Assembly: GCF_009834535.1 (NCBI RefSeq)
Contig: NC_045705.1
Coordinates: 55,614,001 to 55,678,000, forward strand
DNA length: 64,000 nt
Reading direction: 5' to 3'
Source of the DNA: Camelus ferus
Taxonomy: Eukaryota
The notes beneath the pieces were generated by a model. That model worked only from the letters and a program-made list of their open reading frames with translations. It had not been told where the DNA came from and did not search any database. This document shows, in pieces, positions 10,318 through 53,188 of the stretch. Each line of letters starts with the position of its first letter. Position 1 is the stretch's first letter. A program made the position numbers and the translations under genes.

Positions 10318-11271
10318 ATGTCAGTGGCCATGTACAACCTGACTGGCTACAACACAGGTGCCTTCACCCTTCTGGGCATCCCTGGACTTGAGCAGTACCA
10401 CATCTGGATCAGCATCCCCTTCTGTTTTATCTATCTTGTGGCCATTGTGGGTAATAGCATCCTTCTCTACCTCATTACAGTGGAGCGCAGTCTTCATGCA
10501 CCCATGTGCTTTTTCCTTTCTGTGCTGGCTATTACTGATCTCATATTGTCTACCACCTGTGTCCCCAAAACTCTCAGCGTCTTCTGATTTGGTCCCCAGA
10601 AAATCAGTTTCCCTGGCTGTCTCACTCAATTATTCTTCCTGCATTACAGCTTTGTTCTAGACTTAGCTATACTGATGGCCATGGCCTTTGACCGCTACGT
10701 GGCCATCTGCTTACCCTTGAGATACACCACTATCCTGACCACCAGAACCACTGTCAAAATTGCTCTGGGAATCACCTTCAGAAGTTTCTGTGTTTTTGTC
10801 CAGTGCGTTTTCCTTGTAAATCGTCTGCCCTTCTGCAAGACACACAACATTCCCCACACATACTGTGAGCACATAGGTGTTGCCCGGCTTGCCTGTGCTG
10901 ATATCTCCATCAATATCTGGTATGGGTTTTGTGTTCCAATCATGACGGTGATTATAGATGTGATTCTAATTGCTGTCTCGTACACTCTCATCCTCTGTGC
11001 TGTCTTTCGCCTCCCCTCCCGAGATGCTCGCCAGAAGGCCCTGGGCACCTGTGGGTCCCATGTCTGTGTCATCCTTATATTCTATATACCAGCTTTCTTT
11101 TCCATCCTTGCACATCGCTTTGGACATAATGTCCCTCGTACCTTTCACATTATGTTTGCCAACCTCTATGTTATCATCCCACCTGCACTCAACCCTATTG
11201 TCTATGGGGTCAAGACCAAGCAGATCCGAGACAAAATCATTCTTCTCCTGTTTCCTAAGGGGTCCCACTGA
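10318..11271 (+). pseudogene. OR52H2P: Olfactory receptor OR52H subfamily (OR52H2-like), single in-frame nonsense
   Basis: One reading frame with OR52 motifs [58 protein letters not shown]>TGA (Trp90) at 10585-10587 is the only frame lesion. Name from synteny. Confidence 0.85.
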
Positions 11272-17469: not shown

Positions 17470-18411
17470 ATGGTCATTTTCAACCTAAGCAGTTACAACC
17501 CAGGACCCTTCATTCTGGTGGGGATCCCAGGCCTGGAGCAAGCCCATGTGTGGATTGGGATTCCCTTCTGTATCATCTATATTGTGGCTGTTATGGGAAA
17601 CTGCATCCTTCTCTACCTCATCATGGTGGAGCATAGCCTTCACGAACCCATGTTCTTCTTTCTTTCCATACTGGCCATGACTGACCTCATCACAGCAGGA
17701 GTTCCTTAAACACTTAGTATCTTTTGGCTTGGGGCTCGAGAAATCACATTGTCAGGGTGTCTTACACAAATGTTCTTCCTCCACTATAGCTTTGTCCTGG
17801 ACTCAGCGATCCTGATGGCCATGGCATTTGACCGCTATGTGGCCATCTGTTCTCCCTTGAGATACACCACTATCTTGACCCCCAAGACCATCATCAAGAT
17901 TGCTGTGGGCATCTCTTTTCGAAGCCTCTGCATCATCCTGCCAGATGTATTCTTGCTCACACGCTTGCCTTTCTGCAGAACACGCATCATACCCCACACG
18001 TACTGTGAACTTATCGGAGTTGCCCGGCTGGCCTGTGCTGATATCTCCATCAACATCTGGTATGGCTTTTGTGTTCCCATCATGACGGTCATCTCAGATG
18101 TGATCCTCATTGCTGTTTCTTATATGCTCGTCCTCTGTGCTGTCTTTCGCCTCCCCTCCCAAGAAGCCCACCAGAAGGCCCTGGGCACCTGTGGGTCCCA
18201 TGTCTGTGTCATCCTCATGTTTTATACACCTGCCTTCTTCTCCATTCTTGCCCATCGCTTTGGACACAATGTCTCCCTCACCTTCCACATCATGTTTGCC
18301 AACCTTTACATTGTCATCCCACCCACACTCAACCCCATTGTTTATGGAGTAAAGACCAAGCAGATCAGAGATAAGGTCATCATACTGTTTTCTACCAAAG
18401 GTAGAGAATGA
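17470..18411 (+). pseudogene. OR52H1: Olfactory receptor OR52H1 ortholog, disrupted
   Basis: Near-identical to recalled human OR52H1 (FNLSSYNPGPFILVGIPGLEQ...RTRIIPHTYCE...QIRDKVI). AAA>TAA at 17707-17709; 6-bp deletion just before it (TDLI--TAGVP); HTYCEH>HTYCEL. Splice acceptor ctgtcctcag ends at 17440. Confidence 0.9.
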
Positions 18412-29864: not shown

Positions 29865-30882
29865 ATGGGACCAGGCCCTGCACTGCCTGCTTTCAACCAG
29901 ACTGTGCTCATCCCTGGGCCTGGGCCTTTTGTCCTGCTCAGGGTACCGGGAATGGAGGCCTTGCATGCCTGGCTTTCTGTGCCCATGTGTCTGCTGTACG
30001 TGGCAGCTCTGGCAGGGAATGCCCTTCTCCTGGGGCTGGTAGCAGCTGACAAGGCACTTCAGGCCCCCATGTACCAATTGTTGGGGCTTCTGGCCACCGC
30101 TGACTGGGTTCTGGCCACAACCACAGTGCCCAAAGCCCTGGCTGTGCTCTGGGGCCTGTCGGGAGAGATCTCCTTCAGGGCCTGCCTAGCCCGGCTCTTT
30201 GTTGCCCACGTGGCCTTCATTGCCGAGTCTTCGGTGCTGCTGGCCATGGCCGTGGATCGCTACGTGGCCATCTGCCAGCCTCTGTGCTACGGTGCGTTAC
30301 TGACCCAGTGCGTGGCAGGCATTGTGGCTGCAGCTGCGGTGACCCATGGTGCCCGTGTCATGGCCCCCACTGTGGCCTTGCTCTGGAGACTGCCTTACTG
30401 TGGGCATCGGGCCCTGCCCCACACCTACTGTGAGCACATGGGCGTGGCTCGGTTGGCATGTGGCAACATGAGCCCCAGCGTCTGGTATGGACTGGCCACC
30501 ACACTGCTCTCTCCAGCCCTGGACCTAGGGCTCATAGGTGCTTCCTATGCCCTCATTCTCCGGGCTGTGTCGCCTGCCATCCTGTGGTGCCCGCCGCAAG
30601 GCCATGGGCACCTGTGGGGCCCATGCCAGCGTCATCACTCTCTTCTGCACACCTGCCCTCTTCTCCTTTTTGTCTCACCGTTTCAGCCACCACATGGTGC
30701 CCAGCCATATCCACATCCTGCTGGCCAACCTCTACGTGGTGGTGCCCCCAGCTCTCAATCCCGTGGTCTATGGAGTGCGGACCCAACAGATTGCTGAGAG
30801 GCTCAGACGCTGGCTTCAGCTCTGCTGGGCGGGAACCCTGAGGGATGTGGGCCCTGAGAGGGCCTCCCACAGGAATGAGTGA
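29865..30882 (+). pseudogene. OR52V1P: Olfactory receptor OR52V1-like, frameshifted
   Basis: MAVDRYVAIC and HTYCEHMGVARLAC in frame 1; KAMGTCGAH and [16 protein letters not shown] in the next frame; 2-bp loss at about 30570 (gct gtg t|cgc ctg). Acceptor ttccctgcag ends at 29839. Name from synteny between OR52H1 and OLFM5P. Confidence 0.8.
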
Positions 30883-36517: not shown

Positions 36518-37264
36518 GTACTTTGACTACCACCGGCCGCACAAGTCCTGTGATGACCTGGCGCTGCTGAAGAACTACAAGGAGAGGAAGATGGCTATCG
36601 TGACAGCGGTGGCAGTGCTGTGGATGAGAACTTCATGTACTCGAACCGCTACGGCACAGGTGTCATGGCCAAGGTGGGCCTCTCCTCCAACACCCCAGTG
36701 CTGCAGTGCCCGCTGCCCGGTGCCGCCTACAACAACCGCTTCTCCTATGCTGGCGTGCCCTGGAAGGACTTGGACTTTGCTGGAGATGAGAAGGGGCTGT
36801 GAGTGCTCTACACCACTGAGGAGACCAAGGGCAACCTGGTTGTGAGTCGTCTCAATGCCAGCACTCTCGAGGCGGAGAAAACCTGGCGCACCAGCCAATA
36901 CAAGCCGGCCGTGTCAGGAGCCTTCATGGCCTGTGGGGCGCTCTATGCCTCACGCTCACTGAGCACCCGCCAAGAGGAGATCTTCCATGCTTTTGATACC
37001 ACCACTGGGCAGGAGCACCATCTCAGCATCCTGCTGGGTAAGATGCTGGAAATGCTGCAGGGCACCCATTACTGCCCCTCAGATCACAAGTTCTATGTCT
37101 ACAGTGGTGGCTACCTGGTTATTTATGACCTCAGCTTCCAGACACTGAAGCACAGCCTGCCAAGACCACCAGCCAAAAGACCCTCTGGGGCTTGGGTACA
37201 ACCAAAACCTGTCAAACCCCACAAACCTTCCAGGCCCCGAGACTGCAGGACACAGCATTGGTAG
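36518..37264 (+). pseudogene. OLFM5P: OLFM5P last exon (olfactomedin beta-propeller)
   Basis: YFDYHR...[44 protein letters not shown]...QYKPAVSGAFMACGALY...EEIF..FDTTTG matches the OLFM4 C-terminus. Acceptor ctag at 36514-36517; 1-nt deletion near 36594; TGG>TGA at 36800-36802. Confidence 0.92.
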
Positions 37265-37564
37265 AAGTGTGTCCTCCTTCTCCTCCAGATGGGCCACTCC
37301 CCAGAATGGCCATCAGCCCTCATGATTGGGAGACATTGATTATGTCCAGTTAGTTCTTCATAATTAATATCAAGGGACCCACACACAGCGCCACAGAGAA
37401 ACATACATCCCACATAAACAATCTGTTCTTTTATTTATTTTTTTTTAATAGTTCCATCCTGAGAACTTTGTCCCCAGTTTCCTGGAAAATTGTCTTATTT
37501 TATTTTGTTATGGAGACGTGGACTCCCAAAGTACACCTCCTTCCCCAGCTAGTTCAGGCAGAGA

Positions 37565-37587
37565 CTGTGAAGCTTGAGTTGACATCA
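37565..37587 (+). promoter_or_regulatory. Tandem CRE-like element upstream of UBQLNL
   Basis: ctg-TGAAGCTT-gagt-TGACATCA; same spacing as the elements at 43987 and 51405. Confidence 0.5.
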
Positions 37588-37927
37588 CAATATCCCTTTT
37601 CTGAAGAGGGTATGCTTTTGGTGGGTGGGGCAGGGGAGGGGAGACCCTGGGATGGGCCATCACCACTTAGCCTACCTTATATCAAGTATGAATCAGTAGC
37701 CACGCCAGGCCTCAGCTGGGCCACATCTGGAGAACTGGGGTGGGGGTACAACATCGTAAAATACCTGGCCTCAGTCTGGTCACTCATCCCTTTCGGGGCA
37801 ACAAGGAAACCAGCCTGTGGACCAAGAACACAACACCAGAGACGGAGGCCAGCAGAAGTATTTGTCTGCCCTCACCCCTCTGCCCCTGCTCCTGCTTCCA
37901 CCTGCTCCCCATCTGCCACGAAGGTCC

Positions 37928-39721
37928 ATGCCGCACATCATCTCTCGAACACCCAGGATGGCCCAGGGCGGGCGTCCTTCATGTCTGCCTGCAGGCAAGA
38001 ACACCGCTTCGAGTGTCACTCGAGTGATAGTGAAGACACCAGGCAAGCAGGAAGACTTTATGATAGCTGATGACACCTCGGTGAGGCAGTTCAAGGAGAA
38101 GCTATCGGCTCACTTTAAATGCCAAGTGGACCAACTCGTGCTGGTCTTCATGGGCCGCCTTCTCAAAGACCATGACATACTGAGCCAGAGGGGCATCCTG
38201 GATGGCCACACCATCCACTTGGTCATCAAGTCCAAACACAGCTCCAGATCCCTAGCCCATTCCTCCCGGAAACCGTCGACCGATGAGCCCTGCCACCAGG
38301 ACAAAAACACCAAAGGAAACAGCAGTGGGGTACACCAACCTGCCGGTGCGAATCACAGTCCAGTGGAATCAGCTGTATCCGCAGAGCCTGGTGTGCCCAG
38401 GATGCATACCCAGGGCCTGGAAGTGCTCAGTCTGGAGCGCATAGCACAGATACTGGAGAATCCTGGCATCCAGCAGCTTCTGTCTAACACAGACTTCATG
38501 AGACGGTTGATCTCAGAACACCCAGACATGCAACAGTTGATGCAGCAGAACCCAGAGGTCTCACACATCTTTGACGATTCTGATGTCCTATGGCAGACTC
38601 TGGAGCTGGCCAGGAATCTTGCCGTGATTCAGGAGATATTGCAGATCCAGCAACCTGCACAGAATCTCGAACATCCATCGGACCCACAGTCACATGTGGG
38701 CTCAGAGACCACCCGAGGTGAAGACAAGGCCCTGAGTCAGAACTCCGCTGATTTCAATGACCAAATGCTCAGTAGCTCACATGATCCATTTGGGGGCAAC
38801 CTTTTCACAGCTCTCCTGGGAGGACAAGTGCCAGAGCCGGTCCAGTCCTCACCCCCATCTCCACCACCACCGCAGGAGTGGCAGGAACAGCTCCCACAGC
38901 TCCCTACAGCCCGAGTCATCTACGCCAGCTCTCGTGATTTATCTTCAACCGCCTCAGCCAGTGCTACCCCCAGCAAGGCAAACCAGACTTCCAGGGCCAA
39001 TACTGCCGCCAGCTCCACCTACGGCTGGAGTCATACTTGTGACGTTGAGCAGCTAACTGGGTCACCAGCCCTACCCAGCATAGAGCTCACCCAGCAGCCC
39101 CAGGCAGAAGACAAAGATGCCACCACCTCTCTAGACAGCTCTGATCAGAAATTAGAGGATGACCTCCGGCTGCTGGATGAGCAGACTGGCTCCCAGATCG
39201 CCGGAAGCATGACGCAGGTGCTGTTGAACAACCCCTCCCTGGCCGCCCAGATGATGCTGTGCATGAGTATGCCCCAGCTGAGTGAGCAGTGGAGGCAGCA
39301 GCTGCCCGCCCTTCCGCAGCAGACACAGCTTTCTGATATGCTTACAGCCCTAGCCAACCCTAAAACGTCACAAGCGATCCTGCAGATCGAGCAGGGCCTG
39401 CAGCTGTTGGCCACCGAGGCTCCCGTTCTTCTACCTTGGGTTGCTCCCTACCTATGGGGCCTGGGCTGGCTTCCTGCACCCAGCTGCAGCTACCCTGACA
39501 CAGTGCCCGGGGCCTGGGATGTGCCAGATATGGAGGAGCCTAAAGGGCCCGAGTCCTGCCACAAGTCTGGAACGGTCCTGCAGAGTCTACAATCCCGAGA
39601 TGGAGACCCTTCCCACCTCCTGCAAGCCCCTGAGATTCGTTTCAGCAAGCAGATGGAATCTCTGCACGCCATGGGGTTCGGGAATCACCAAGCCAACTTA
39701 CAGGCCCTCATTGCCACCTGA
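37928..39721 (+). CDS. UBQLNL: Ubiquilin-like protein, 597 aa, C-terminal UBA truncated by a frameshift
   Basis: MPHIISRTPRMAQGG...RVIVKTPGKQEDF...QLVLVFMGRLLKDHD matches recalled human UBQLNL (MWHAISRTSRMSQSG...); UBL, STI1-like and M regions; UBA MGF motif, then TGA at 39719-39721. The ORF-track start at 37817 is GTG; the conserved ATG is at 37928. Confidence 0.92.
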   Translation: MPHIISRTPRMAQGGRPSCLPAGKNTASSVTRVIVKTPGKQEDFMIADDTSVRQFKEKLSAHFKCQVDQLVLVFMGRLLKDHDILSQRGILDGHTIHLVIKSKHSSRSLAHSSRKPSTDEPCHQDKNTKGNSSGVHQPAGANHSPVESAVSAEPGVPRMHTQGLEVLSLERIAQILENPGIQQLLSNTDFMRRLISEHPDMQQLMQQNPEVSHIFDDSDVLWQTLELARNLAVIQEILQIQQPAQNLEHPSDPQSHVGSETTRGEDKALSQNSADFNDQMLSSSHDPFGGNLFTALLGGQVPEPVQSSPPSPPPPQEWQEQLPQLPTARVIYASSRDLSSTASASATPSKANQTSRANTAASSTYGWSHTCDVEQLTGSPALPSIELTQQPQAEDKDATTSLDSSDQKLEDDLRLLDEQTGSQIAGSMTQVLLNNPSLAAQMMLCMSMPQLSEQWRQQLPALPQQTQLSDMLTALANPKTSQAILQIEQGLQLLATEAPVLLPWVAPYLWGLGWLPAPSCSYPDTVPGAWDVPDMEEPKGPESCHKSGTVLQSLQSRDGDPSHLLQAPEIRFSKQMESLHAMGFGNHQANLQALIAT

Positions 39722-39945
39722 GGGAGACACCAGCGCAGCCGTCCATAAGCTCAGGAGATCTCAGGGATCCTAACCACTGTGCCCACCCGTTTGCTGGTTA
39801 CCTGAATGCTGACCCATTTGACTTCCTCATCTCTGCCTTTTCCGTCTCTTCTGATGCTTCCAGCTAGGAGAAGTCCTGGAATAGGAGAAACCAAACAATG
39901 CTTTCTCTGCTGAAAAGACCACTGGCCATGGCTGAAAGATCTGTC

Positions 39946-39951
39946 AATAAA
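39946..39951 (+). terminator. Polyadenylation signal of UBQLNL
   Basis: AATAAA about 225 nt after the stop codon. Confidence 0.65.
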
Positions 39952-40019
39952 ATGGCTACATCAACTTACCTCCATCTGAGGTTTGGCTTACTTTTTTGCA
40001 AAAAAGGCAACTGTCTATG

Positions 40020-40400
40020 TGCGATAGACACCTACATCACCTGCCTCACCTATCATGCAGGCATACATACACATACATGTTCATACATGCATGCCGTACA
40101 TAGTACATGCATGAACACACACATAGCACATGCATGTATTCATAGAGAGATAGAGAATCATATCTGCACACATGGAAACACATGCACAGATATCATATGC
40201 TCACATACCCAAGAACACATGTATATAGCCTTGGACCGGTGTTCACATGTGGCTCACACAGCCAAAGATTCAAGTATATAGGCACATAAAGTCAACACAC
40301 CATACACACAGCCACGTACACACAGCCATGTACACACACGGCTGCACACAACTACGTAGAGACCCATAAACAGACCCACGTGTAGAGGAAGATAGTCAAA
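40020..40400. repeat. Degenerate (CA/TA/TG) alternating purine-pyrimidine low-complexity tract
   Basis: catacatacacatacatg...catgcatg...acacacagcc, read directly. Confidence 0.85.
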
Positions 40401-44125: not shown

Positions 44126-44422
44126 GTATGTATTCCCCAAACTGGGTCCTATTTGCTGCCCTTGCCCCTTCACTCATCAACTATAGACCTCTTTCCCAGG
44201 GCCTCAGGCCTCCCTCCCCTGGCCCTCAAACTCTCTCAAACCCAAAGTCCTCCCAAAGCATCCTATCCCAGGGACCTCATAGCCCCTTCCATGTGGACCC
44301 TCCAGTTCCCCCACCCTGAGGCCCCAGATCCTCTTCCTGTCCACCTTTCTTACTTTCACCACTGCCCAAAAGGATGATCGAGGTCTCTCATTCCCACCCC
44401 ACCCCCAGCTGTGTCCCCATAG
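44126..44422 (+). other. UBQLN3: Predicted UBQLN3 5'-UTR intron
   Basis: Donor CTG|GTATGT at 44126; pyrimidine-rich run ending ccccatag at 44422, 23 nt before the ATG; human UBQLN3 has two exons as I recall. Confidence 0.65.
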
Positions 44423-44445
44423 ACTTGGACCTCCTGCTGCCCACC

Positions 44446-46410
44446 ATGGCCAAAAGTGGAGAGGCCCTGCCTCAGGGCAGCCCAGCGCCGGTCCAGGACC
44501 CCCACCTCATCAAGGTGACAGTGAAGACGCCAAAGGACAAGGAGGATTTCTCAGTTACAGACACTTGCACCATCCAGCAGCTGAAGGAAGAGATATCACA
44601 GCGCTTTAAGGCCCACCCTGATCAGCTGATCCTAATCTTTGCTGGCAAAATCCTCAAGGACCCTGACTCACTGGCCCAGTGTGGGGTCCGAGATGGCCTC
44701 ACTGTTCACCTGGTCATCAAAATGCAGCGACGCACCATGGGCACGGAAAGCCCAGCTGCTTCAGTCCCTACCCCAGCCCCAAGCTCTGGATCACTCCCTC
44801 AGCCAAACTCCATTTACCCAACAGATGGGCCACCCACCTTTAGCTTAGGTGTCCTCACTGGCCTCAGTGGGCTAGGCCTGACCTCTGGTAGCTTTCCTGA
44901 CCAGCCAAGCTCACTGCTGTGGCAGCACGTGTCTGTGTCTGAATTTGTGGCTCAGATCATCGACGACCCCTTCATCCAGGGTCTGCTGTCCAACACAGGC
45001 CTGGTGCGCCAGCTGGTTCTTGACAACCCCCATATGCAGCAGCTGATCCAGCACAACCCTGAGATTGGGCATATTCTCAACAACCCTGAAATCATGCGGC
45101 AGACCTTGGAGTTTCTACGCAACCCTGCCATGATGCAAGAAATGATGCGGAGCCAGGACCGGGCACTCAGCAACCTGGAGAGCATCCCTGGTGGCTACAA
45201 TGTGCTCCGTACCATGTACACAGATATCATGGACCCTATGTTTAATGCAGTACAGGAGCAGTTTGGGGGCAATCCCTTTGCTACCTCCGTGGCTGCTAAT
45301 GCCAGCAGCAGCAGCCGCCAACCTTCAAGGACAGAGAACTGTGACCCTCTCCCCAACCCCTGGGCTTCCACATACACAGGGTCAGGCAGCAGGCGAGGCA
45401 GAAGGCCTGGGGACCTGAATGTATCTGAAATTAGAAATAGGTTTCCCAACATTCTAGGTAATATAGGGCTCAATGACTATTTCCAGCAATTACCCCAGGA
45501 CCCCCAGTCCCTGGGAACCTATCTGCAGGGGATTGCATCTACTTTCAGCCCAAGCCAAGATCTACCACCACCACCACCACCACCACCAGGAAGCCAAGTT
45601 CCTCCAACTTCCCCCTTAGGCCAGCCTCTCCCCAGGGAGTCAGTAGCAATCAAGGGAAAGTCGTCCTGCCCAGCATTCCTGAGATACCCCACAGAGAGCA
45701 GTACGAGAAAAGATGGAGGCCAAGGTGGCACAGGGAATGGCTCCACTGGCCACAGCACCAACATATCTGATCTTGTCTCTGGGCTGGGGAATGCTGCCAG
45801 CAGGGCCCCGTTGGTTCCTTCACCCCCTTCTCCCACAGCAGCTATGGCAGAATTCCCTGAGCACGCCTGGTTGCCGCCACCAGGTTATCCGAGATCTCTG
45901 AGGCCAGCCAGCATGAATCAGACCCCCCAGCTGCAAGACGAGATGTGCTGGCAGCTGCCGCTGCTGCTACACCTTCAGGCAGCCATGGCCAACCCTCGTG
46001 CCGTGCATGCCCTGCTGCAGATTGAGCAGGGTCTGCAGATCCTGGCTACTGAAGCACCTTGCCTCCTGCTCTGGTTCATGCCTTGCATCACAGGTCTGGG
46101 AAGCATGGCAGCAGGTACCGAGCCCAGAGAGGGTGCCCTCGTGCCTGAAGATTGCCCTCCAGCCCCAGCTCCTGAGGTTCCCTCAGCTCCAGGCTCTGTG
46201 GAGCTGGGCCTCCATTCCAGTCCCTTCCTCCAGATGTTGCAAGCCCTCACTGGCTCCCATCCCCAGCAGCGGCAGCCCGAGACTCACTTCCGGGTACAGC
46301 TTGAGCAACTGCGGGCCATGGGCTTTCTGAATCCTGAAGCCAATCTCCAGGCCCTCATTGCCACAGAGGGTGACGTGGATGCTGCTGTGGAGAAGCTGAG
46401 GCATTTGTAG
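44446..46410 (+). CDS. UBQLN3: Ubiquilin-3, 654 aa, intact
   Basis: Kozak ccaccATGg; [35 protein letters not shown] matches recalled human UBQLN3; ends in a complete UBA ([27 protein letters not shown]). The ORF-track ATG at 44374 lies in the predicted intron. Confidence 0.97.
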
Positions 46411-51404: not shown

Positions 51405-51427
51405 CTGTGACTTCATTGCTGACATCA
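51405..51427 (+). promoter_or_regulatory. Tandem CRE-like element upstream of UBQLN5
   Basis: ctg-TGACTTCA-ttgc-TGACATCA. Confidence 0.6.
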
Positions 51428-51625
51428 TCTCCCCTAAGGCTGGCTCTAGAGAAGGGCAGTTGCCACCTCATGGGAGCCAGGTGGTGGCAGGGCTACACTG
51501 GAAGGCAGTGTCCACAGGACGTGGGTGAGAGGACATCATTGTACACCTACTGGTCCCTGCGTCCAGGTGTACTCGGTACTACATCTAGACTTCTTCAGAC
51601 TCCTGCATTCTGCTCTCGAGGAAAT

Positions 51626-53188
51626 ATGGCACAGGCTAGGGAAGAAGCAGGGGACAGTCAGCTGGTGTCTGGTCGGGAGCCACCATCACGCATCATCAGA
51701 GTGTCTCTCAAGACCCCACAGGACTGCCAGGAATTTATGCTGGCAGAGAACAGCAGCATCCACCACTTTAAGAAGCAGATCTCCAAACGCCTTCACTGTG
51801 ACACTGACAGACTGGTGCTCATCTTCACAGGAAAAATCCTCCGGGATCAAGACATACTGAGCCAGCGAGGCATCCTTGATGGCACTACGGTCCACTTGGT
51901 AGTGAGGACTCGTGTGAAAGGAACTCAGCCCGGTCCCGGTGCTCTGCCAGGCCCCACTGGACACTGTGCCCATCGTTCTGAACCATCCACCTCGGAGAGT
52001 GCTGGGGTGCTAGCCAGGCTGGGCCGGCTGGCCCAGGGCTCTCCTGATCTGGCAGACCTCCTCGGCCAGCTAGCTCAACTCCTGATGGTTGCGCCCGAGG
52101 CCGTGGTGCAGCTCTCGGAAGACCCTATGGTTCAAGGCCTGGTAAGTGAGAAACTAGCCAATGCCAGCCATGTTTCTGAATCCTCAAAGCCAGTACACAA
52201 ACCCGAGCTGGCTCTTAAGGTTCTGGAAAACTTGCAGAACCTGGCCCAGTCACCGGAACTCCTGCAGGCAGACAAGTGGGGACTGGAGGCCTTGAAGGCA
52301 GTGCCAGGTGGTGACAATGCCACGCATCCGGTCTGCTCTGATATCCAGCACCTCATGCTCTCCACTCTGGCCTCACTGGCTGCTTCCAAAGGCCATGGCC
52401 CAAGTTCAGAGCCCAGCAGAGGGGGCGCCAATCCTCACAGCAGTACTAACACAACCACCACCATCGTCCCCACAGCCGCTGCACCTGCCAGGCCACTGGC
52501 ACAGGAGGTCAGAGCAGGAGTCATTGCTCAAGTCAGGGGCATGGTCTCAAACCAGGCCAATTCAGGCTGCAGGACTGGGACGTCGGACTTAAATTCGGGC
52601 CAGGATCTTTCCTCCCAGGAGAGCCAACAGCCCATAGGGAAAGCCACACCAGCCAGTCAGCTGAGAACTTCACCTTCTGCCTTGTGCAGAGCTCTGCATG
52701 TCCTGCAGCAGAATCCAGCTCTGCTGCGCCAGCTGGTGACCGACAGCCCCCTGCGACACCATATGCCACTGCTTCCCATACTCACCAACCCACAGGCACT
52801 TCAGGCATTGATCCAGATAGAAAAGGGCCTGCAGATACTGTCCAGGGAGGTGCCTGGGTTGGGACCTTGTTTATGGGGTCCAGGTAGACCACATGGGGCT
52901 AGAGGAGCTCCTGAAACTAGGGGTGGAGGACAAGGTCACAGAGCAGACCCTGTGCAACCCACACTGGCCGTTCTTCAGCTCCTCCGTGCACTGGCCCATG
53001 CTTGCCCCCAGTCTACCCAGTCCTCCCTGCCCTCGTGCCCCCTCGCTGACAGCTGCTACCAGCAAGAACTGGAGCATCTGAAGGCCATGGGCTTTGCTAA
53101 TCGTGATGCCAATCTTCAGGCCCTGGTGGCCACAGGTGGAGACATCCATGCTGCCATTGAGAGGCTGCTGGGGGTATCAGAGGCCTAG
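51626..53188 (+). CDS. UBQLN5: Ubiquilin-5, 520 aa, intact
   Basis: Kozak aatATGg; UBL ([10 protein letters not shown]...[12 protein letters not shown]...GTTVHLVVR), M-domain [20 protein letters not shown], complete UBA ([31 protein letters not shown]). Third intronless ubiquilin, in the position of rodent Ubqln5. Confidence 0.85.

What the first reader, a model, noticed from the sequence alone, without database searches (positions are those of the whole stretch)
39713..39773. UBQLNL: a one-base insertion removes helix 3 of the UBA domain
Seen: att gcc acc tga ends the ORF at ALIAT*. The +1 frame continues gag gga gac acc agc gca gcc gtc cat aag ctc (EGDTSAAVHKLRRSQGS*, stop 39771-39773), which matches UBQLN3 [13 protein letters not shown]. 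Removing one C at about 39717-39718 restores a 614-aa protein with a full UBA. Known: the UBA is a three-helix bundle whose ubiquitin-binding surface uses the MGF loop and helix 3; human UBQLNL (475 aa as I recall) lacks the UBA through a different, earlier stop. Inference: either convergent loss of ubiquitin binding in UBQLNL (a UBL-only shuttle or decoy) or an assembly indel.
Basis: partly seen in the sequence, partly recalled or inferred. Interest (0 to 1): 0.7.

Follow-up and report, generated by a model that had tools for sequence, protein, structure and literature searches.

The report
Camel UBQLNL frameshift is assembly error
The one-base frameshift that seems to cut the last helix off the ubiquitin-binding domain of a testis ubiquilin gene is seen only in this wild Bactrian camel assembly and sits exactly on a C/T polymorphism, so it is almost certainly an assembly error, not a gene change.

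Summary
The single-exon UBQLNL ORF (37928-39721) ends at ALIAT*, and the +1 frame continues with EGDTSAAVHKLRRSQGS* (stop 39771-39773). The lost tail holds all of helix 3 of a genuine UBA domain.

The frameshift was found in nothing but this assembly, BCGSAC_Cfer_1.0 (GCA_009834535.1).
- At the DNA level, four other camelid assemblies read GCC ACC GAG. These are the 2013 assembly of the same species, a 2025 HiFi Bactrian assembly, a dromedary and an alpaca.
- Three Logan contigs read GCC ACT GAG.
- Two further Camelus proteins are 614 aa with an intact tail.

The site is therefore a synonymous C/T polymorphism, and the window carries both alleles in tandem (ACC-T-GAG). That pattern fits a consensus or polishing error at a heterozygous site.

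Twenty public runs hold the flanking sequence. No run was listed for the 31-mers specific to the insertion.

Direct read laying failed: a filter blocked both calls, so a private real allele in the sequenced animal is not formally excluded (about 10%). Convergent UBA loss in camelids is refuted.

An earlier follow-up in this scan judged another frameshift in the same genome (OR51E2, s1-149040) to be an assembly error. Several more single-base frameshift notes in this genome have not been followed up.

Interest is low.

The parts
37928..39721 (+). UBQLNL coding sequence as written in this assembly (597 aa plus a premature TGA); single exon
   Evidence: Searches give the ORF and its translation. 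One search finds Pfam ubiquitin (1.7e-14) and the UBQLN1 domain (2.8e-30); 96% identity to alpaca ubiquilin-like protein; this exact 597-aa product is in NCBI, on one contig; that contig is CM020777.1 of GCA_009834535.1.
39717..39719 (+). The spurious base. The window has C-C-T where the other genome assemblies have C-C and the Logan contigs have C-T (Thr codon ACC or ACT followed by GAG).
   Evidence: this is the only 1-bp insertion private to the window in the compared stretch, and it falls exactly on a segregating synonymous C/T site.
39700..39700 (+). Linked SNP (A in the window and the Logan contigs; G in the four other assemblies). It marks the derived A...T haplotype.
   Evidence: table of variable sites.
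39720..39773 (+). Displaced last 17 codons plus the true stop codon (EGDTSAAVHKLRRSQGS*), which encode the turn and helix 3 of the UBA
   Evidence: The residues are identical to the tails of P0122-P0128. The DNA is identical to the Bactrian 2025 and C. ferus 2013 assemblies from 39720 to the stop at 39773. Helix 3 is residues 47-58 of the model.
39641..39770 (+). UBA domain region (PEIRF... to ...RSQGS) when read across the extra base
   Evidence: PDB hits 2DNA, 2JY5, 2KNZ, 7F7X and 2DAH; alignment with nearly invariant G45, D46, A49, A50 and L54 in the lost part.
44374..46410 (+). Neighbouring UBQLN3 ORF with an intact UBA (context)
   Evidence: UBL, UBQLN1 domain and UBA PF00627 at residues 642-675; tail alignment.
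51407..53188 (+). Third tandem ubiquilin ORF (UBQLN5-like) with an intact UBA (context)
   Evidence: ubiquitin domain and UBA (1.5e-07). The tandem order matches the UBQLNL-UBQLN3-UBQLN5 group described in PMC4230246.

Best explanation
The gene is the ordinary, intact, testis-type single-exon ubiquilin-like gene UBQLNL of the wild Bactrian camel. The premature stop is an error of the BCGSAC_Cfer_1.0 consensus sequence. At a synonymous C/T polymorphism in the Thr597 codon (ACC/ACT), the assembly wrote both alleles one after the other (ACC-T), which adds one base and creates TGA. The most likely cause (inferred, not shown) is that the sequenced animal, or the pooled data, was heterozygous G...C / A...T here. 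Long-read consensus or short-read polishing then merged the two alleles into an insertion. The real protein is 614 aa: a UBL domain, a central ubiquilin/STI1 region and a complete three-helix UBA.
For: (1) At the DNA level, four other assemblies read GCCACC-GAG: C. ferus 2013 (GCA_000311805.2, the same species), C. bactrianus 2025 (GCA_048773025.1, PacBio HiFi/hifiasm per PMC12905343), C. dromedarius (GCA_036321535.1) and alpaca. (2) Three Logan contigs from runs SRR33069689, SRR33069688 and SRR33129662 read GCCAC-TGAG. They share the window's A at 39700, so the same haplotype exists without the extra base. (3) Two further database proteins, a second dromedary assembly and the older Bactrian RefSeq model, are 614 aa with the intact tail. 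The truncated product occurs on one contig only, the window's own. (4) The 801-bp surroundings are held by 20 public runs, with shares from 0.67 to 0.94; the 14 genomic-type runs are at 0.93-0.94 and none reaches 1.0. For the 60-bp stretch whose 31-mers all span the insertion (3 sampled words), no run was listed. (5) The displaced tail and its stop codon match the intact Bactrian and C. ferus 2013 alleles base for base, so there is no decay after the 'frameshift'. (6) The gene is under purifying selection in camelids, with dN/dS of 0.33-0.37 for camel against alpaca. The tail is nearly invariant from marsupials to placentals. (7) Context: this assembly has a contig N50 of 5.4 Mb (Table 1). That it was built from early, error-prone long reads is my recollection and was not checked here. 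Uncorrected PacBio indels that truncate predicted proteins are a concern raised for camel assemblies (PMC7468183). Other notes of this scan list many single-base frameshifts in conserved genes of this genome, and one (OR51E2) was judged false on follow-up (not tested here).
Against: No raw reads of the assembled animal were inspected. Both read-laying runs returned nothing because of a filter. The k-mer search rests on only 3 sampled words and on the runs that are served. A genuine C duplication on the A...T haplotype, private to the sequenced animal, would look the same in the assembly. The mechanism (merging of two alleles) is inferred from the pattern, not shown.
Confidence: 0.88

Rival explanations
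1. A real but rare or private frameshift allele. A one-base C duplication arose on the derived A...T haplotype in the sequenced wild camel or its population. It would give a UBQLNL protein that keeps the UBL and the first two UBA helices but lacks helix 3, and so probably cannot bind ubiquitin.
For: The window carries the A at 39700 that marks the derived haplotype. ACT to ACCT is a simple duplication of the preceding C. The reads of the assembled animal could not be examined. Annotated UBQLNL proteins without a UBA exist in other mammals, so loss may be tolerated.
Against: It is absent from every other sequence found. That includes three contigs of the same haplotype and the 2013 assembly of the same species. 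No listed run holds the allele-specific words. The inserted base coincides exactly with the alternative allele of a SNP, which is expected for an artefact and only by chance for a real mutation. On prior odds, an uncorrected indel in an assembly of this kind is far more likely than a private frameshift in the last 17 codons of one gene (inference).
Confidence: 0.1
2. Lineage-wide convergent loss of the UBA in camelid, or in C. ferus, UBQLNL. This would turn it into a UBL-only shuttle or decoy, in parallel with the human truncation.
For: Only the window sequence itself, plus the fact that shorter UBQLNL proteins are annotated in primates, horse, hippopotamus, some bats and some rodents.
Against: Dromedary (two assemblies), domestic Bactrian (two assemblies), C. 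ferus 2013 and alpaca all encode the full 614-aa protein. The Logan contigs are intact. The tail shows no decay.
Confidence: 0.02

Closest known systems
UBQLNL (ubiquilin-like protein) of Camelus bactrianus, C. dromedarius and Vicugna pacos, 614 aa
   Same: It has the same single-exon gene and the same position next to UBQLN3 and a UBQLN5-like gene. Protein identity is 96% to alpaca over the 597 aa and higher to the Camelus proteins, which differ at only a few residues. The displaced tail matches the Camelus tails exactly.
   Different: The window has one extra base at 39717-39719, which splits the last 17 codons into another frame.
Human UBQLNL, annotated without a UBA (465-aa form in the database; 475 aa by recollection)
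   Same: Orthologous gene; the annotated product lacks the UBA.
   Different: The human stop lies about 130 codons further upstream, at ...ISDLLSA. It is carried by 112 member sequences on 43 contigs, so it is a real, widespread state. The camel stop is seen in one assembly only.
Solved ubiquilin UBA domains (mouse UBQLNL-type 2DNA; UBQLN1 2JY5/2JY6; UBQLN4 2KNZ; UBQLN2 7F7X; UBQLN3 2DAH)
   Same: The camel C-terminus read across the extra base aligns end to end, with E-values from 5.6e-22 to 4.4e-11. It is predicted to form the same helical bundle, with a pLDDT of about 93-95 over the core.
   Different: The Pfam UBA model PF00627 scores below its cut-off for UBQLNL proteins in general (16.8 bits against 22.4). 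This is a property of the subfamily, not of this camel.
Uncorrected long-read indels in camel genome assemblies (discussed in PMC7468183)
   Same: A single-base indel truncates a predicted protein in a long-read-era assembly, while other assemblies, including an Illumina-era one and a HiFi one, are intact.
   Different: Here the error is not in a long homopolymer. It sits at a SNP, with both alleles written in tandem.

Membership tests
Ubiquilin family, UBQLNL orthologue | N-terminal ubiquitin-like (UBL) domain | tested here: met
   Pfam PF00240 at residues 34-102, E 1.7e-14, above the cut-off.
Ubiquilin family, UBQLNL orthologue | Central ubiquilin/STI1-type domain | tested here: met
   Pfam PF23195 at residues 172-239, E 2.8e-30.
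Ubiquilin family, UBQLNL orthologue | C-terminal UBA domain (three helices, MGF loop) | tested here: inconclusive
   In the window as written, the domain is cut after helix 2. Read across the extra base, it is complete and matches solved UBAs. All other camelid copies have it.
Ubiquilin family, UBQLNL orthologue | Closest relatives are proteins named UBQLNL, not UBQLN1-4 | tested here: met
   The top ~90 hits that carry a name are mostly 'ubiquilin-like protein' of mammals at 55-96% identity. UBQLN1, UBQLN4 and UBQLN3 proteins appear only below that, at 29-44%.
Ubiquilin family, UBQLNL orthologue | Intronless gene in tandem with UBQLN3 and UBQLN5 (PMC4230246) | tested here: met
   Three ubiquilin ORFs lie on the + strand at 37928, 44374 and 51407. 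The Logan contigs are colinear with the genome over 1.8-2.9 kb.
Assembly (consensus) artefact | Absent from independent assemblies of the same and sister species | tested here: met
   C. ferus 2013, C. bactrianus 2025 (HiFi), C. dromedarius and alpaca lack the base.
Assembly (consensus) artefact | Absent from sequencing reads | tested here: inconclusive
   Allele-specific 31-mers: no run listed, against 20 holders of the flanks. Three Logan contigs lack the base. The reads of the assembled animal were not seen, because read laying gave nothing.
Assembly (consensus) artefact | No secondary decay downstream of the frameshift | tested here: met
   The tail codons and the stop are identical to the intact Bactrian and C. 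ferus 2013 alleles.

The most novel reading that the evidence does not exclude
The extra C is a real, rare allele segregating in wild Bactrian camels. It would be a natural UBQLNL variant that keeps the UBL and the first two UBA helices but lacks helix 3, and so a natural test of whether ubiquitin binding by this testis-specific ubiquilin matters for fertility.
Probability: 0.08. Interest if true: 0.3.

Novelty: not a real feature. Interest (0 to 1): 0.07.

Why it matters
The main value is as a correction. The public C. ferus annotation carries a 597-aa UBQLNL without a complete UBA. That entry could be mistaken for lineage-specific loss in comparative screens of gene loss or of ubiquilin evolution.

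The case also shows a recognisable error signature: both alleles of a SNP written in tandem. This signature could be used to flag other false frameshifts in this assembly, where the scan has noted many.

If the allele were real, it would be a modest curiosity in a gene whose precise testis role is still unknown (PMC4230246).

Tried and rejected
- **Read laying.** (39650-39880, four runs) laid nothing, and the tool itself says this can be a false negative.
- **Exact look-up of the GTG-start truncated ORF.** The 634-aa sequence is not in the protein collection. This is weak negative evidence only.
- **Pfam UBA on the tail.** It scores below the cut-off even for intact orthologues. Pfam therefore cannot show presence or absence of the UBA here, and I used solved structures and a model instead.
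- **Homopolymer slip as the explanation.** The run is only CC, and the SNP coincidence explains the base better, so I did not favour it.
- **RNA editing or programmed frameshifting.** Rejected, because the Logan contigs simply lack the base.
- **Earlier scan notes on a 'heterozygous' error pattern.** The search found nothing.
- **Literature on how this assembly was built.** The accession was confirmed as C. ferus BCGSAC_Cfer_1.0 with a contig N50 of 5.4 Mb. The original assembly paper (Ming et al. 2020, Mol Ecol Resour) is not in the library.

Full report
**What is there**

The + strand reads gcc acc tga at 39713-39721. The ORF that starts at the ATG at 37928 encodes 597 aa and ends ...NLQALIAT*. 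From 39720 the +1 frame reads EGDTSAAVHKLRRSQGS, with a stop at 39771-39773.

The protein has a UBL domain (PF00240, 1.7e-14) and the central ubiquilin domain (PF23195, 2.8e-30). Its best database relatives are mammalian 'ubiquilin-like protein' (UBQLNL) sequences, led by alpaca at 96% identity. Most of these are about 600-620 aa long.

The gene lies upstream of two further ubiquilin ORFs, both with intact UBA domains: UBQLN3 at 44374-46410 and a UBQLN5-like ORF at 51407-53188. Olfactory receptor genes surround them. This is the tandem 'UBQLNL group' described by Marín 2014 (PMC4230246).

**Is the lost piece really helix 3 of a UBA?**

Yes. The last 60 residues of the intact Bactrian orthologue match solved UBA domains:
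- 2DNA, a mouse UBQLNL-type domain, at 5.6e-22
- the UBQLN1 UBA 2JY5/2JY6 at 8.1e-13
- UBQLN4, UBQLN2 and UBQLN3 at 1e-12 to 4e-11

An AlphaFold model built on a 25-sequence alignment has a mean pLDDT of 83, and about 93-95 over the core. Its helices fall at residues 19-28, 33-42 and 47-58. The window's stop falls after residue 43, so helix 3 is removed entirely. So are the nearly invariant G45, D46, A49, A50 and L54.

Pfam's UBA model is below its cut-off for UBQLNL proteins in general, so Pfam is not informative here.

**Where the window comes from**

The exact 597-aa product is in NCBI on one contig only. That contig is CM020777.1 of GCA_009834535.1. [quoted passage not shown] Its contig N50 is 5.4 Mb (PMC12905343 Table 1).

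**Other camelids**

The 90%-identity cluster that holds the window's protein contains eight other sequences:
- two dromedary proteins from different assemblies
- two Bactrian proteins from different assemblies
- the C. ferus 2013 model, a chimeric 1009-aa prediction
- the alpaca protein
- two products of Logan contigs

All eight read ...[13 protein letters not shown](H/R)KLRRS(Q/H)GS.

I fetched the DNA for these and compared it with the window. The four genome assemblies read GCCACC-GAG. They are C. ferus 2013, the C. bactrianus 2025 HiFi/hifiasm assembly (PMC12905343), C. dromedarius and alpaca. The three Logan contigs read GCCAC-TGAG. Only the window reads GCCACCTGAG.

**The telling detail**

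The Thr597 codon is polymorphic: ACC is ancestral and ACT is derived. It is linked to a G/A SNP at 39700. The window has the derived A at 39700 and then both the C and the T. It carries the two alleles of one SNP in tandem.

A random real insertion would land on a SNP, and equal its other allele, only by chance. A consensus or polishing step working on a heterozygous site produces this pattern readily. That mechanism is my inference; it was not shown here.

Downstream, the displaced 17 codons and the true stop match the intact Bactrian and C. ferus 2013 alleles base for base.

**Reads**

Both read-laying runs failed for technical reasons and say nothing either way. The k-mer index gives an indirect test.

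Twenty runs from two organism labels and several studies hold the 801-bp surroundings, with shares from 0.67 to 0.94. The 14 genomic-type runs sit at 0.93-0.94 and none reaches 1.0. The shortfall is about what the loss of the insertion-spanning words would give: 3 of 72 sampled words, plus one or two others. For the 60-bp stretch 39688-39747, every 31-mer spans the insertion, and no run was listed. This rests on 3 sampled words and on the runs that are served, so it is supportive rather than decisive.

**Constraint**

UBQLNL is under moderate purifying selection in camelids, with dN/dS of 0.33-0.37 for camel against alpaca. There are too few substitutions to test the UBA alone. The tail is conserved from marsupials to placentals in roughly three quarters of the 100 best hits.

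**Assembly context**

- In the 7.8 kb compared, the window also has a private 3-bp deletion and a private 8-bp deletion.
- A camel genomics paper explicitly discusses uncorrected PacBio indels that truncate predicted proteins (PMC7468183).
- This scan's notes list many single-base frameshifts in conserved genes of the same genome: CD19, SLC4A2, SERINC4 and CCDC89. An OR51E2 frameshift 0.8 Mb away was judged false on follow-up. I did not test these notes and use them only as context.

**Verdict**

The frameshift is almost certainly an assembly error at a heterozygous or polymorphic C/T site (0.88). A real private allele in the sequenced animal remains possible (0.10), because its reads were not seen. 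Lineage-wide convergent UBA loss in camels is refuted (0.02 or less).

The broader idea that UBQLNL loses its UBA repeatedly in mammals is not addressed by this locus. Shorter annotated proteins in primates, horse, hippopotamus, some bats and some rodents would each need the same kind of check.

Noticed in passing
proteins P0040, P0044, P0049, P0053, P0056, P0057, P0072, P0073, P0083, P0086, P0087, P0089, P0091, P0092: Annotated or ORF-called UBQLNL products without the UBA tail occur in several lineages: anthropoid primates and some lemurs (human 465, Rhinopithecus 457, Cebus 426, Propithecus 456), horse 536, hippopotamus 452, phyllostomid/mormoopid bats 549/536/539, and some rodents (Mastomys 534, Lemmus 505, Microtus oregoni 570). 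Microcebus and Otolemur are intact. This may be recurrent real UBA loss or more assembly/annotation errors. Each case is untested.
   Followed up: no
window 34962 and 35761: A 3-bp (CTT) deletion and an 8-bp deletion are private to this assembly. The comparison was against C. ferus 2013, C. bactrianus 2025, dromedary and alpaca. They are either private variants or further consensus errors. Both are non-coding.
   Followed up: partly
window 37967, 38178, 39600: Non-synonymous polymorphisms in UBQLNL within the Bactrian/wild Bactrian group: Ser/Gly at residue 14, Thr/Ile at residue 84 and Ala/Asp at residue 558. The window combines alleles seen separately in the 2025 Bactrian assembly and in the Logan contigs. 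That pattern is either recombination or a mosaic of two haplotypes in the consensus.
   Followed up: partly
window 10675-11271, 17749-18411, 29865-30797: Three olfactory-receptor ORFs match only part of the 7tm_4 profile: positions 86-278, 66-279 and 1-195 of 280. They may be OR pseudogenes or further frameshift errors of this assembly.
   Followed up: no
window 36803-37264; P0125 (EPY80493.1): An olfactomedin-like ORF lies just upstream of UBQLNL. The 2013 C. ferus gene model fuses an olfactory receptor, this OLF piece and UBQLNL into one 1009-aa chimeric protein.
   Followed up: no
L001-L003 against window 37451-40380: Logan contigs of 1.8-2.9 kb from three 2025 runs are colinear with the genome and roughly bounded by the gene. 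RNA-seq runs labelled 'reproductive system' hold 0.67-0.89 of the locus words. This is consistent with an intronless transcript expressed in testis. That the three contigs are transcripts is my inference.
   Followed up: partly
P0004 (alpaca, 497 aa): An older alpaca UBQLNL entry lacks about 117 internal residues but keeps the UBA tail. It is probably an assembly-gap or annotation artefact of an earlier alpaca assembly.
   Followed up: no
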